Shown here: piece by piece, positions 2,419 to 26,250 of the stretch
Layout: every line of letters begins with the position of its first letter
Numbering within the stretch: position 1 is the stretch's first letter
Assembly: GCA_053919585.1 (NCBI GenBank)
Contig: CM132796.1
Reading direction: 5' to 3' (one strand)
Length of the DNA: 64,000 nucleotides
Source of the DNA: Euprymna scolopes
Lineage: Eukaryota
Notes under the pieces: model-generated
What the model was told of the DNA's origin: nothing
Database searches by the model: none
What the model saw: only the letters and a program-made list of their open reading frames with translations
Program-made: the position numbers and the translations under genes

Positions 2419-2890
2419 TAGCAAGATGCGTTAATCGGCATTGCCCGTTGGTAGCATGCATCCCCTCCCCTGGGAGTGGGGTTGTGAAAAAAAATTTCTG
2501 GAAGGTTCACGGTATTTTGCAGGATATGGTTCAGTGTAAACTTCAAGGCAAGGTATTTTATATGGCTAGACTTGAGTTATGGTGACAAATCTATCGGCCC
2601 CTGTGACCCTTGGAGCAAACTAAATCCTAGTAGCCACTTGGCTGTTACTAAATATAAATGTAAACGCTGTTTAATAAAGGAAGCGTTTTAATTAAGCTGT
2701 AAAAGTAAATACTTTAAAAACAGACCGCTTAATGCAATAAAAAATAATGGTAAATCTAGTTCCTTAACTTTTAATAGGTTAAATTTAATCATGTTATTAT
2801 TGAAAATGTAAAGCTGAAATAATGTTATTATTCGGAAAGCTATTCTCTAAATGGTGAGGGTGTTTAGTAAATAATGTCTGCTTCAGCCTT

Positions 2891-4531
2891 TTTTTATTTC
2901 ATTTTCACCCCAAACAAGGGACATTGCCACTTTGGTGTAGGGGGCTACTATCAGGGGCAGCAACTATTGTTCGTAACTGGTTCGGAAAAACACACACCTG
3001 AGCCCATCGTTGCGCCAAGATTCGATTAAGGCAGCGGAATAGAATAGGGGAGACAGCAATTGGGCGAAGGAGGGTGGGCTCGCTGGCATCCGGCGACTTC
3101 GGGATAAGGGAGACTTTAGATCGGATAAGAGAGAGGGGATGTGCTTCACAAAGCAACACAAGATTCAAGGTGGCTGTCACTATTTTGATCCTCTGCAAGG
3201 CCTCGTCGGCTGTGAGTCCATCCAGGCCAGGCGAGGAGCCGCGCATAGCCTTTAGGGAACCCACAACCTCTTCCTCACAGAGGGGGGGGAGCACAGGCTA
3301 CCACTTGTGCCCCCTAGACTGCGCCGGTCTGTTGTCCGGCTCGCCAGGTGCGGACAATTTCCGCTCCCAATAATCAACAGACCCCTCCTGAAGACGTCGT
3401 TCGGCACACGATGTTGCCTCCCTCCATCTCCCAGAGAGGACCGCGTCGGTTCAGTCCTTCCGCTTAACTCTATACAGTCGCTGAATGGCAGCATAAGCCG
3501 CCCTTCGCAACGCCCTCTTGTCACCCTTCGGGGCACCAGCCACAGACCTGGGTCTAGAGCCTTTTCCCCCGTGAGACTGGTTCTTGCGAGCCAGCCTCCC
3601 AGACTGCTTGTGACGAAGCGGCCGGCCCGATATAAGCGCATCGTCCCCCTCCCCTCCAGCGGACGGGGAGAGGTAGCGCAGGAGAAAGGTGTCGATCTGC
3701 CCGGTTACCACCTCCAGGTCGGTACCCTCGCGAATCAAACCAAGAATCCGCAGCAATGCAACGCGAGCCTGATAAGAGGATGGATCAAGCTCTCCGAGAA
3801 CCAGCTTCACCTGATTCTCCACCTTCAGCCGCCAGCTCCGATCATCCACAGCTGGACTCAAAGAATCGCACTCCACAACCGTCTCCCCCGCAGGAGAGCT
3901 CACACTTCTTACACCCGCCGGAGACTGCTGCTTGCCCAGGTGAATTATGCGCTTCCTCACCGGCTCAGCCGAGCGGCCAAAACGGGGAGAAATTGCGGCA
4001 CACAACTCCGCCTTCGTTCGATATCGATCCCTCATCTCGGACGCACAAGCTGACAAAAGTCGGGTTTGTCGAGGGTGTCTATGTTGTGGGGGCACCAGTT
4101 TTTGCAGTTCGTCAGAGCATTCATCATTAAAATACTTGTAGAACAGGCAGAGGGATGCAACGTTTCGTCGATGGGATAGAGGCTTAAGCTTAGATGCCAG
4201 TTCAGGGCCTATCAGATTGGCGACTCTCTTTTGAACCTTGTCAAGGAGCGAGAGACTAGCAGCAGATGCACCAGCCCAAATGTGACAACAATACTCCATA
4301 CATGGGCGAATGGTGGCCTTATAGATGTACAGGATACTTTCAGGTGTCAGTAGTTTTCTAGCACGGTAGAGAGAGCCTACCTTCTTCGCAGCGGCCCTGG
4401 CAATGTTTTCAATATAATTGTTCCAAGTCATGTTTCCTGTGAACGTTAGGTCAAGCAGTTTGAAAGATGTACTCTCAGACAGGAAGTCACTTGCCATTGC
4501 TATTGGCGGCAGAGAAGGTTTCTTGTAATTA
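2891..4531 (-). mobile_element. Chimeric 5'-truncated retroposon: CR1-Zenon ORF2 C-terminus + R2-clade internal fragment + Zenon 3' UTR and A-rich tail
   Basis: 4531-4059 encodes Zenon motifs (YKATIRPCMEYCCHIWAGA, LSHRRNVASLCLFYKYF). The segment ~2970-2891 matches the Zenon 3' UTR seen at 24700-24755. Direct repeat CAGCCTT at 2884-2890 and 4532-4538 (TSD). Confidence 0.85.
2972..4058 (-). mobile_element. R2-clade non-LTR retrotransposon fragment (myb-like region, linker, start of RT), two in-frame stops
   Basis: Translation includes FGRSAEPVRKR (myb-like), RRAAYAAIQRLYR, SSPGLDG, SLIPK, RPIAVSPILFRCLNRILAQR, matching the order of R2 motifs. GC-rich against the background. Confidence 0.8.
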
Positions 4532-4939
4532 CAGCCTTACAATGTAATAAAAAAATATCGTAAAGCAATGAATTTAACTTGCGAAAGCTATATAAAAATG
4601 CGCTATGGTATCACTGTCTTCCATCACAGGCGTCCTAGATAAATATACACTTAAAAAGTTAGTGCTTTGTCACTCTTGGTACCGCGCTCTATGTAATTAA
4701 TGTTATGAGATTATATTCAACTTTCACGCTATTTTTTTATTCAATGGTAATATGAAAGAATATTTACAAAAAACCGTCCTCTTCCCAATGTAAAAATAAT
4801 TACCCAAAATTTTACTTTGTATTGTTCAAGGCTTTTAATTATAAATTATCTAATGATACCTAGTACAACTACAGTTTACATTATTATTTTTTGTGGTAAA
4901 TAACAAGAGTCTTTCCACCCTCGAAAAAAAAAACATAAA

Positions 4940-22867: not shown

Positions 22868-24600
22868 TAGCATTTCAGCTCGGCGTTGCCCGGGTGTTTG
22901 GATGTGTATGTTGACAAAAAAAAATGGTAGTAAAAAGGCAGGTTAGAACACGTATTGCGAAGGAGGAAAAGAATGGGGGGGGGAACATGACGACTTTACT
23001 GTTACGACCACTTCCAAATCGGAAGTGACTTATTTTTATATTAAGGCTAGACAATCGAAAGGAGAGGATGACTTTCAAAAATATCCGCGAAAAAGCGAAC
23101 ACACCCCCTGTAGAAAAGTTCATAGTTGAAGGTGAACATCTTAATATTTTTAGCCAATTTTTCGATATTTGTCGTCTGAAAGTCGAACTTCACAAACGAT
23201 GCTGATCTTGGTAAAATCTGTAGCCTCTGCTGAAAGTTTTAGGCGGACATGCAAACATACATACATACATACATACATTTATATATTGGTAACTAAAAAT
23301 TTTCGGCCCAAACCAATTTAAAAGCTTGGTATATCTCTGAATACCCTTTATGTAAAATTTCAAATGGTTAGACCAGAAATGAGTAATTTGCTGGAGACCG
23401 AAGTGGTCAATTTTTTTTTTAACTTTTACCCTATTATGACGCCTTAACATCTAATCTTTTAAGCTCAAATCAAGTTAACATCTAATGTTTTAAGCTCAAA
23501 TTAAGTTATTAAGTCAGATCCATGTGCAAGGAACTTATATATAAAATTTCAAGTGCGTAGACCTGAAATAGTCGTACGAGTTTGGGAGAGTTCTCAAAGG
23601 TTAAATCGCTCTACTTTGACCCCTTAACAGCCATATTTCTGGCCAAAAACCGATCAGATAGATTTTCCCACATCTCAGTATCCTGTAATAAAATTTCGAG
23701 TCTATAAACTGAAAATTAACAGAGTTATTGCTTAGGGAAATGAACACACACAGACACATAGAGGCACAGATACACAGACACACAGATACACACACAGATA
23801 CACAGACACGTCCACTTTTATAGATATACTTGCATGGGTGACAGGCGTTGCCCGGGTGTTTGGAGGTATATTTTATTTTTTTTTTAAATTGACCCCTATT
23901 ATGACTCCTTAACATTTATTTTGCGCTCAAATCAACTTATTAAGTTAGATCCATGTCCAAGGTACCTATATCTAAAATTTCAAGTGTTTAGAAACAAAAT
24001 TATCGGAGGTCAAATTGTTGAACTTTGACTCCTTAACAGTGAAATTGACACTTTTTCGATATTTTCGTATGTAAGGTCGAACTTTAAAACGATATTGATC
24101 TTGGTAAAATCCGGCGCCTGTGTCGAAAGTTTTAGGCATACATGCAAACATACATACATACATGCATGTATATATTGATAACTGCACATATTCGATCCAA
24201 ACCGATGAAAAAGCTTCTGAATACCCTTTATGTAAAATTTCAAATATTTATACCAGAAATTGTCTGATTAATTTGTTAGAGACCGCAGAGGTTCAATATT
24301 TTTTATATTGACCCCTAATATGACCCCTTTCAATTTTTTTTGGTTTGGGCTCAAATAAAGTTATTAAGTTAGATCCGTGTCCAATGAATCTATATCCAAA
24401 AATTTTAAGTGTTTAGACCTAAAATTGTCGGAGAAGTTTGGTAGAGTTCTCAGAGGTCAAATCCTTGAGCTTTGACCAGTTAACAGCCAAATTTCTGTCC
24501 GAGAACCAATCACATAGATTTACCCAAATCTCAGTACCCTGTATATCAAATTTCAAGTCTGTAGACTAAAAATTGACAGAGTTATTGCGTAGGGAAATCT

Positions 24601-24640
<40 letters not shown>

Positions 24641-26250
24641 GACACACCGACACACGGATACATAGACACGTTCAGATTTATAGACATTTTTTAAATTACA
24701 TTTTCACCCCAAACAAGACACATTGCCACTTTGGTGTAGGGGGCTACTATCAACTACTGGGGCACTATGTTGGGATTTGGCCAGCAAGATGTCGGGTTAC
24801 GTTACACTTGAATTTCTGCATGTTAGTAAAGTTAGGGAAGCAGGAACCTGGAATGGAATTCCAGAGTCTAGCGGTTCTGAGGAAGAAACTACTGGAGTAG
24901 AAAGATCTTTTACATCTAGGGATCTCTACTGTGTGGGGTGGGATTTAGCTTCCTGTCGGGTTTAGACTAGCATGGGTGCCTGGGGTTGTCCGGGTGTTTG
25001 GAGGTGTATGCCGAGCAAACAAATAAAAACAAAAAAAGAACGGTCAATGTTGTAAAACTTTGACCCCTATTATGACCCCTTAAAATTTATTGATTTGGAC
25101 TCCAATTTAGTTATTAAGTTAGATCCATGTCCAAGGCGCCTATGTCTAAAATTGCAAGTGTTTAAACCCAAAATGGTTGGAGGATTTTGGAAGAGTTCAT
25201 AAAGGTCAAATCGTTAGACTTTGGCCCCTTAACAGCCGAAATTCTGTCCGAAATTTTCTCAAGTCTCAGTACCCTGTATATCAAATTTCGAGTCTGTAGA
25301 CTTAAAATTGAGAAAGTTATTGCGTAGGGAAATGTACACAGACAGACACACAGACACACAGACACGTTCACTTTTATAGATATACTAGTATTTTAGCCCG
25401 GCGTTGCACGGGTGTGTGGAGGTGTATGTTTAGCAAAAAAACGGTCCTTTCTGTTAAATTTGACCCCCATTATGGCCCCTTAAAAATTATTGTTTTGGGC
25501 TCAAATCAAGTTATCAAGTTAGATCCATGTCCAAGGAATAAATATCTAAGCTTTCCAGTGTTAAGATCGAAAATAGTCGGAGGTGTTTGATAGAGTTTTC
25601 AAAGGTCAAATCGTTGAACTTTGACACCTTAACAGCCAAATTTCTGGCCGAAAACCAATCACAAAGATTTTCCCAAATCTCTGTACCCTCTATATCAAAT
25701 TTCGAGTCTGTAGACTGAAAATTAACAGAGTTATTGCAAAGGAAAATGTACACAGACAGAGAGACAGACACACAGACACTTTCACTTTTATAGATATATA
25801 GACTAGCATTTCAGCCCGGCGTTTCCCAGGTATTTGGAGGTTTATGTTGAGCAAAAAAGGAAAAAAAGCGGTCAATTTTCTTAACTTTGACCCCTATTAT
25901 GACCCTTTAAAATTTATTTTTCTGAACTCAAATTAAGTTATTAAGTTAGATCCATGTCCAAGGAAGATATATCTAAAATTTCAAGTGTTTAGACCCAAAA
26001 TTGTCAGAGGAGTGTGGTAGAGTTCGCAAAGGTCTAATCGTTGAAGTTTACCCCTTTATAGCAAAGTTTCTGGCCGAAACCCGATCACATTGATTTTACC
26101 CAATCTCAGTATGTTGTCCATCAAATTTTGAGTCTGTAGACTGAAAATTTACAGAGTTATTGCGTAGGGAAATGTACACACACAGAGACACAGACAGACA
26201 GATGCACAGACAGATACACAGACACGTTAACTTTTATAGATATATAGATA
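22867..26250 (-). mobile_element. Head-to-tail array of 5 non-autonomous Helitron units (family A)
   Basis: 3' termini (CCCGGGCAACGCCGGG-type hairpin + CTAG/CAAG) at 22867, 23829, 24967, 25385 and 25803. Each internal terminus abuts the next unit's TCTATAAAAGTG 5' end, except 24967 where a Zenon fragment intervenes. Confidence 0.85.
24687..24962 (-). mobile_element. CR1-Zenon 3' end inserted at a Helitron unit junction
   Basis: Minus-strand SHPHTVEIPRCKRSFYSSSFFLRTARLWNSIP..FKCNVTRHL*, then 3' UTR and A-rich tail. Possible TAGAC TSD. Confidence 0.85.

What the first reader, a model, noticed from the sequence alone, without database searches (positions are those of the whole stretch)
2884..4538. 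Zenon-R2-Zenon chimeric retroposon in one frame, bounded by a single TSD
Seen: a CR1-Zenon ORF2 end breaks at ...RQTR (~4059) and continues in frame into ~1.09 kb of R2-clade sequence in the same orientation. It then resumes at the Zenon stop/3' UTR. About 180 nt of Zenon, present in the copy at 24770-24955, is missing. CAGCCTT flanks the whole unit. The R2 piece has no rDNA flank, tail or TSD of its own. Established: R2 normally targets 28S rDNA, and non-LTR RTs can switch templates. Inference: a double template switch between an APE-type and an RLE-type LINE RNA, or a chimeric master element moving R2 sequence outside rDNA.
Basis: partly seen in the sequence, partly recalled or inferred. Interest (0 to 1): 0.75.

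Follow-up and report, generated by a model that had tools for sequence, protein, structure and literature searches.

The report
Dead LINE copy carrying an R2 fragment
One old, dead copy of an abundant jumping gene has about 1.1 kb of a different, ribosomal-DNA-specific jumping gene (R2) spliced into it; this is most likely a copying accident in which the reverse transcriptase hopped between two RNAs, a known kind of event that here happened only once.

Summary
On the minus strand, 4531 to 2891, lie four pieces. First comes a 5'-truncated "Zenon-like" LINE ORF2 end of 473 nt. Then comes an internal piece of a genuine 28S-rDNA R2 element, R2 nt 382-1465, with no indels, in frame and carrying 2 stops. 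A 5-8 nt filler follows, then the last 76 nt of the Zenon 3'UTR with its poly(A). A 5-7 bp target-site duplication, (AA)GGCTG, bounds the unit. About 197 nt of Zenon is missing, not about 180.

Each junction occurs exactly once in the 5.9-Gb assembly, so there is no amplifying chimeric family. Misassembly is unlikely because the R2 piece is 8.7% diverged from every R2 copy seen.

Polarised substitutions show 3.2% neutral decay in the R2 piece. The Zenon parts show 1.9-3.2%, so the pieces are of the same age. This, together with the shared orientation, modestly favours one retrotransposition event with two template switches (about 0.55). The rival is later capture of an R2 fragment at a break inside a resident Zenon copy (about 0.33).

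A second R2 fragment, on contig C29, sits inside another repeat. Its R2 3' boundary lies 4 nt from this one.

Comparable chimeras are known: Buzdin-type tripartite chimeras and Drosophila R2/R1 hybrids. Interest is low to moderate.

The parts
4532..4538 (-). 5' copy of the target-site duplication (AAGGCTG on the minus strand)
   Evidence: Directly precedes the first Zenon-homologous base. The family sequence at this position is different (CCTTCAA), so the motif is flank and not element.
4059..4531 (-). 5'-truncated Zenon-like LINE: end of the RT domain plus the ORF2 C-terminal region, stopping about 63 codons before the stop codon
   Evidence: 95-96% identical over 473 nt to more than 30 genomic copies. 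It differs from the family majority state at 15/472 sites. Longer copies carry RVT_1 just upstream.
2975..4058 (-). Internal fragment of R2 (R2 nt 382-1465; ORF aa about 105-467, from the Myb motif to RT motifs 1-2), in frame with the Zenon ORF, with 2 stops and no indels
   Evidence: 91% identical to six R2 copies that are more than 99% identical to each other and sit in 28S rDNA. The parent ORF matches R2Bm 8gh6 at E = 4e-108. The C at 4059 is shared by both parents.
2967..2974 (-). Filler ACGAACAA (5-8 nt) matching neither parent
   Evidence: Alignment of junction B. The 8-mer is absent from the rDNA unit, R2 and 1.6 kb of Zenon.
2891..2966 (-). Zenon 3'UTR tail (starts 8 nt after the family stop codon) and short poly(A)
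   Evidence: 93-97% identical to the tails of many copies, which lie about 197 nt downstream of the 5' piece in intact copies.
2884..2890 (-). 3' copy of the target-site duplication (AAGGCTG; the two A's are ambiguous with the poly(A))
24687..24963 (-). Comparator: an ordinary 5'-truncated Zenon 3' end in the same window that holds the stretch missing from the chimera
   Evidence: It translates to the usual ORF2 end ...SFFLRTARLWNSIP...HLAGQIPT*.

Best explanation
This is a single, dead-on-arrival chimeric retrocopy made in one target-primed reverse transcription event of the Zenon-like LINE.

Inferred sequence of steps:
1. The LINE enzyme nicked the target at ...CAGCCTT and primed on the poly(A).
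2. It copied 76 nt of the Zenon 3'UTR.
3. It left that RNA, adding 5-8 extra nucleotides.
4. It continued on an R2 RNA at R2 nt 1465 and copied 1084 nt of it, down to nt 382.
5. It switched back to Zenon RNA about 197 nt upstream of where it had left, with 1 nt of microhomology.
6. It copied 473 nt more and terminated.
7. The whole cDNA was integrated between one 5-7 bp duplication.

The copy has since decayed by about 3% and was never amplified.

Shown: the anatomy, the R2 parentage, the uniqueness of both junctions and the equal age of the parts. Inferred: that the joins were made at the cDNA stage.
For: - All three pieces are collinear and in one orientation, directly abutting, with 1 nt of microhomology at one junction and a short filler at the other.
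- One 5-7 bp duplication bounds the whole unit.
- The R2 piece lacks the R2 3' end, any rDNA flank and any duplication of its own, so it did not arrive by R2's own mechanism.
- Polarised substitutions: 57 changes arose in the living R2 lineage, distributed over codon positions 11/12/34, which indicates selection. 35 are private to the chimera, distributed 10/12/13, which indicates neutral decay, giving 3.2% (3.3% outside CpG).
- The Zenon parts differ from the family majority at 3.2% and 2.7% of sites; the strictly private figure is 1.9%. The R2 piece is therefore not younger than its host.
- Double template jumps by LINE reverse transcriptases, giving tripartite chimeras flanked by duplications, are documented (PMC2104539).
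Against: - The outer duplication and the collinearity are equally expected if an R2 fragment was captured later in a resident Zenon copy.
- Returning to the same template about 197 nt upstream (A to B to A) is not the usual pattern of published chimeras.
- The genome holds at least five other internal R2 fragments outside rDNA. Some have no retroelement partner, and one lies in a (TA/TG)n microsatellite. A LINE-independent route for scattering R2 pieces therefore probably exists.
- A second fragment sits in another repeat with only about 6 nt of the host lost, which looks more like break repair.
- The age test has wide errors (35 versus 9-16 substitutions).
Confidence: 0.55

Rival explanations
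1. Two steps. An ordinary 5'-truncated Zenon copy (about 747 nt) inserted first. Soon afterwards a double-strand break inside it was repaired by end joining that lost about 197 bp and captured a stray R2 cDNA or DNA fragment as filler.
For: - Other R2 internal fragments truncated at both ends lie outside rDNA without any LINE tail. L054 sits in unique DNA and L055 inside a (TA/TG)n tract.
- L056 sits inside another abundant repeat whose intact copies have the two flanks only about 6 nt apart.
- A short filler and 1-nt microhomology are also typical of end joining.
- Extra-rDNA, incomplete, divergent R2 copies are known from Drosophila (PMC2718515).
Against: - It requires the same orientation by chance (1 in 2) and an unusually large deletion.
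- It requires capture early in the life of the copy, because the R2 piece shows at least as much neutral decay as its host (3.2% versus 1.9-3.2%).
- The insert lies only 76 nt from the host's 3' end. The L056 insert lies about 100 nt from the end of its host repeat, although that host's class and orientation are unknown. This placement fits early template switching better than random breaks.
Confidence: 0.33
2. This is a retrocopy of an already chimeric Zenon-R2 master element, that is, a chimeric family that moves R2 sequence.
For: The fusion is in frame, and the outer duplication is compatible with retrotransposition of a chimeric RNA.
Against: - A 26-mer and a 30-mer across the two junctions, allowing 2-3 mismatches, each hit only this locus in 5.9 Gb.
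- BLAST of 80-mers gave only half-matches elsewhere.
- The fusion removes the last 63 codons of ORF2 and adds a non-functional R2 piece.
Confidence: 0.07
3. Assembly or read chimera joining a Zenon copy with rDNA-derived R2 reads.
For: rDNA and R2 are repeated and prone to misassembly. No reads were available for a check.
Against: - The R2 piece is 8.7% diverged (94 of 1084 sites) from all R2 copies in rDNA, which are more than 99% identical to each other. It is at most 93-94% identical to any other fragment seen.
- Both Zenon flanks continue in register, and a duplication frames the unit.
Confidence: 0.03

Closest known systems
Bipartite and tripartite chimeric retrogenes formed by LINE template switching (U6/L1 chimeras; Magnaporthe WEIRD/Mg-SINE/MGL; Gogvadze et al. 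2007, PMC2104539)
   Same: The pieces are in the same orientation and directly fused, with a LINE 3' end and tail at the 3' side. One duplication flanks the whole unit, and two switches are needed for three parts.
   Different: The published tripartites join three different RNAs (A-B-C), and the acceptor is usually a small abundant RNA copied from its 3' end. Here the enzyme would return to the first template (A-B-A) with a 197-nt skip, and the middle part is an internal coding piece of another LINE.
R2/R1 hybrid SIDEs and the R1-R2 fusion array of Drosophila (Eickbush & Eickbush 2012, PMC3414825; Stage & Eickbush 2009, PMC2718515)
   Same: R2 (restriction-like endonuclease type) sequence is joined upstream of the 3' end of another LINE lineage. 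The authors discussed either a template jump by the other element's reverse transcriptase or non-homologous recombination as the origin.
   Different: Those hybrids keep the R2 ribozyme, stay in the rDNA (R1 site), and are amplified, functional, non-autonomous families. This one is a single dead copy outside rDNA, carries an internal ORF piece and has no ribozyme.
28S rRNA/LINE-1 and other ncRNA/LINE-1 chimeric insertions in mammals (bioRxiv 10.1101/2025.02.02.635956)
   Same: Fragments of nucleolar RNA, mostly in sense orientation, are fused to LINE sequence and flanked by duplications.
   Different: The partner there is rRNA itself rather than the R2 insertion within it. The chimeras are bipartite, with the foreign part at the 5' side.
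Extra-rDNA R2 copies (PMC2718515)
   Same: R2 sequence outside 28S genes that is incomplete and divergent from the rDNA population.
   Different: That paper does not describe these copies as embedded in another LINE.

Membership tests
R2 (28S-rDNA-specific non-LTR retrotransposon), parent of the middle piece | Insertion at the canonical 28S site ...CTCTTAAGG / TAGCCAAATGCC... | tested here: met
   In L052 and L053 the 3516-bp element is flanked by ...ACTATGACTCTCTT and TAGCCAAATGCCTCG. Rfam LSU matches lie on both sides.
R2 (28S-rDNA-specific non-LTR retrotransposon), parent of the middle piece | Single ORF with N-terminal zinc finger and Myb motif, RT domain, and C-terminal CCHC plus restriction-like endonuclease | tested here: met
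   The 1069-aa ORF matches R2Bm (8gh6) over aa 246-1057 at E = 4e-108 and matches R2Tg. RVT_1 scores E = 7.5e-34. The C2H2, Myb-like, CCHC and KPD motifs are visible in the translation.
R2, the piece in the window as a mobile R2 copy | Own 3'UTR, 5' ribozyme, rDNA flank | tested here: not met
   The piece is R2 nt 382-1465 only and abuts Zenon sequence on both sides.
CR1-Zenon LINE (host element) | Reverse transcriptase domain | tested here: met
   RVT_1 at E = 7e-25 and 2.6e-22 in longer copies (L062, L050), directly upstream of the part present in the chimera.
CR1-Zenon LINE (host element) | N-terminal AP-type endonuclease | not tested
   No full-length copy was obtained.
CR1-Zenon LINE (host element) | Clade assignment by RT phylogeny or Repbase match | not testable with these tools
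No repeat library is available. Copies end in ...GGGGTGAAAATGTAAT plus a poly(A) of 7-30 nt, not in a CR1-type microsatellite.
Template-switch chimeric retrocopy | Parts co-oriented, directly fused, LINE 3' end with tail at the 3' side | tested here: met
Template-switch chimeric retrocopy | One target-site duplication around the whole chimera | tested here: met
   (AA)GGCTG abuts both ends. The 5' copy is not part of the family sequence. Other copies of the family show short, inconspicuous duplications.
Template-switch chimeric retrocopy | Parts joined before integration, giving the same age | tested here: inconclusive
   Neutral decay is 3.2% in the R2 piece and 1.9-3.2% in the Zenon parts. 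This is compatible with one event but also with early capture.
Amplifying chimeric family | Several loci sharing the same junctions | tested here: not met
   One hit for each junction pattern in the whole assembly.

The most novel reading that the evidence does not exclude
R2 RNA, perhaps a species with a discrete 3' end near R2 nt 1465-1469, is a recurrent acceptor for template jumps by the reverse transcriptases of dispersed retroelements in this mollusc. Pieces of a nucleolar, rDNA-confined element would then be scattered through the genome inside other retroelements, always close to the host element's 3' end. Two cases were seen: Zenon here and repeat X on C29.
Probability: 0.2. Interest if true: 0.5.

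Novelty: new member of a known kind. Interest (0 to 1): 0.3.

Why it matters
This is a clean, datable fossil that probably records two template switches by a LINE reverse transcriptase between its own RNA and the RNA of an rDNA-specific element. It adds an invertebrate example with an A-B-A topology to a known class of events. It also shows one way R2 sequence can end up outside rDNA. It has no sign of function or amplification, so its value is mechanistic and anecdotal. That would change only if a genome-wide census showed that such R2 captures recur at a preferred R2 breakpoint.

Tried and rejected
- **Pfam on the chimeric ORFs:** no significant match; the pieces are too partial.
- **First Rfam run:** a run over three loci at once failed and was repeated per locus.
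- **Apparent 28S break in L051:** the break at model position 1888 was an artefact of local alignment plus a rearranged unit. The true R2 site was found by motif search.
- **LINE tail next to fragment L054:** its downstream 76 nt is not a repeat.
- **Source of the 8-nt filler:** not found in R2, rDNA or Zenon. A 6/8 resemblance to R2 sequence 4-11 nt away is not significant.
- **Fold of the Zenon 3' region:** the skipped segment roughly coincides with a closed multibranch domain, but z = -1.75, so it was not used.
- **Full-length Zenon:** three copies fetched were all 5'-truncated. As a result APE and clade could not be tested, and repeat X could not be read from an intact copy.
- **Rfam on L056:** nothing found.
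- **R2-target-like site in Zenon:** only a GTAGCC hexamer 20 nt away from the junction. Insertion by R2's own machinery is also excluded because the piece lacks the R2 3' end.
- **Large protein searches:** not used; the PDB match and the insertion site already settle R2.

Full report
**What is there.** The feature reads on the minus strand. Going 5' to 3' (window 4538 down to 2884) it consists of:

| Piece | Window coordinates | Size |
|---|---|---|
| 5' target-site duplication, AAGGCTG | 4538-4532 | 7 nt |
| Zenon-like LINE (end of RT, ORF2 C-terminal region) | 4531-4059 | 473 nt |
| R2 fragment | 4058-2975 | 1084 nt |
| Filler ACGAACAA | 2974-2967 | 8 nt |
| Zenon 3'UTR plus short poly(A) | 2966-2891 | 76 nt |
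| 3' target-site duplication, AAGGCTG | 2890-2884 | 7 nt |

A search of the window's own 5.9-Gb assembly splits the 1655-nt unit into three blocks:
- Query 8-480 matches very many copies at 95-96% identity.
- Query 480-1564 matches a handful of copies at 91%.
- Query 1570-1650 matches the same many copies again.

In every intact copy the third block lies about 197 nt downstream of the first (for example L015 1973 versus 2171). The missing stretch is therefore about 197 nt, made of the last 62 codons, the TAG stop and 8 nt of 3'UTR. The ordinary copy in this window at 24687-24963 contains that stretch and translates to the usual ORF2 end.

**The middle piece is R2.** Six genomic copies match it over its whole length and are more than 99% identical to each other beyond it on both sides.
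- Around them lie 18S, 5.8S and 28S rRNA.
- The 3516-bp element is bounded by ...ACTATGACTCTCTT on the left and TAGCCAAATGCCTCG... on the right, which is the canonical R2 site.
- Its 1069-aa ORF has RVT_1 and matches the solved Bombyx R2 protein over aa 246-1057 at E = 4e-108. Zinc-finger, Myb-like, CCHC and endonuclease motifs are visible.
- The piece in the window is R2 nt 382-1465 (aa about 105-467). It has no indels, and its frame is continuous with the Zenon ORF. That continuity has a 1 in 3 chance and shows no sign of selection; there are two in-frame stops.
- It has no ribozyme, no 3'UTR, no rDNA flank and no duplication of its own.

**The host element.** Longer copies carry RVT_1 directly upstream of the part present here. 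Copies end in ...GGGGTGAAAATGTAAT plus a poly(A) of variable length. They are 5'-truncated at many positions and have short duplications. The AP-endonuclease domain and the 'CR1-Zenon' clade label therefore remain untested. An earlier scan note calls this a large mollusc genome; I did not verify that.

**Junctions.** At the Zenon-to-R2 junction the two parents share a single C. At the R2-to-Zenon junction 8 nt (5 nt under an alternative alignment) match neither parent, and I found no source for them. The 5' duplication copy is not Zenon sequence, since the family has CCTTCAA at that position.

**One locus only.** BLAST of 80-mers across each junction gave only half-matches elsewhere. Pattern searches with a 26-mer (up to 2 mismatches) and a 30-mer (up to 3 mismatches) found exactly one place each in the whole assembly.

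**Not a misassembly.** The R2 piece differs from the modern rDNA R2 at 94 of 1084 sites. It is at most 93-94% identical to any other R2 fragment seen. A join of present-day reads would carry present-day R2 sequence.

**Age test.** I used nine older R2 fragments to polarise the 94 differences.
- 57 arose on the lineage of the living R2. Their codon positions are 11/12/34, the signature of purifying selection.
- 35 are private to the chimera, with codon positions 10/12/13, which indicates neutral decay. That is 3.2%, or 3.3% outside CpG.
- The Zenon parts differ from the family majority at 15/472 and 2/75 sites. 7 of the 16 differences counted are shared with other copies, leaving about 1.9% strictly private.

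The R2 piece is thus at least as old as its host copy. This fits a single event and argues against capture long after insertion, though the counts are small.

**Mechanism.** I favour one target-primed reverse transcription event with two template switches (0.55). Four observations support it: common orientation, direct fusion, equal age, and an exit point only 76 nt from the 3' end. LINE reverse transcriptases are known to make double jumps that yield duplication-flanked tripartite chimeras (PMC2104539). An R1 (AP-type) enzyme jumping to R2 RNA has been discussed for the Drosophila R2/R1 hybrids (PMC3414825).

The main rival (0.33) is an ordinary Zenon insertion followed soon by break repair that lost 197 bp and captured an R2 fragment. 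The outer duplication does not discriminate between the two. The genome clearly contains other internal R2 fragments outside rDNA without a LINE partner, as is also known from Drosophila (PMC2718515).

**A second case.** On C29 (locus L056) R2 nt 720-1469 lies inside another repeat, X, which has more than 1000 candidate copies. Searches with each flank hit the same intact copies, such as C29:94297153-94297482, with the two flanks only about 6 nt apart. X extends at least 620 nt on one side and ends about 100 nt beyond the R2 piece on the other.

The R2 3' boundary there (nt 1469) is 4 nt from the one here (nt 1465). My own estimate of the chance of such a coincidence among the roughly 14 boundaries examined is about 0.04. 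If X is a co-oriented retroelement, this would point to a preferred R2 RNA 3' end as jump acceptor. If it is not, the small host loss favours break repair for both cases. I could not read an intact X copy, so this stays open.

**Verdict.** It is a unique, old, non-functional chimera, and a new member of a known kind of event.

Noticed in passing
L056 (G000:C29:92085319-92086066, minus strand): A second sandwich: R2 nt 720-1469 lies inside another abundant repeat ('X', more than 1000 candidate copies). In intact X copies the two flanks are only about 6 nt apart. The R2 3' boundary is 4 nt from the one in the window chimera. The class and orientation of X are unknown.
   Followed up: partly
L054 (C34:25170247-25170974), L055 (C14:89202171-89202559), L057 (C14:68416427-68417197), L059 (C46:86308553-86309637), L058 (C18:124110064-124111435): Further R2 fragments outside rDNA, 86-93% identical to the rDNA R2. 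Most are internal pieces truncated at both ends. L055 lies inside a (TA/TG)n microsatellite. L058 reaches the R2 3' end, has internal deletions and follows a poly(G) run.
   Followed up: partly
L051 5261-5577 (G000:C26, about 20.104 Mb): In this rDNA unit, which sits on a 110-Mb scaffold, the 317 bp of 28S just upstream of the R2 site are inverted and the preceding 293 bp deleted, compared with L052 and L053; the inversion alone is also seen against three further R2-bearing loci. It is a rearranged, probably dead unit.
   Followed up: partly
G000:C23:59230030-59334615: At least ten hits only 69-74% identical to the R2 piece are clustered within about 105 kb on one strand. This may be a divergent second R2-like lineage in a tandem array.
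   Followed up: no
L052 and L053 (5' junctions of R2 in 28S): The 5' junctions differ between copies: CTCTT|GTTGCACC in one, and CTCTTAAG + AGACTCTCTT + GTTGCACC in the other, a small duplication of target sequence. This is the usual R2 5'-junction variation.
   Followed up: no
window 24600-24690: The ordinary Zenon copy at 24687-24963 has its 3' end separated by about 35 nt from a (CA)n/(CACACCGA)-type microsatellite.
   Followed up: no
L019/L062 (G000:C36, about 63.012 Mb): This Zenon copy has a premature TGA (CGA to TGA) 13 codons before the family's TAG stop, which explains the apparently shorter ORF there.
   Followed up: yes
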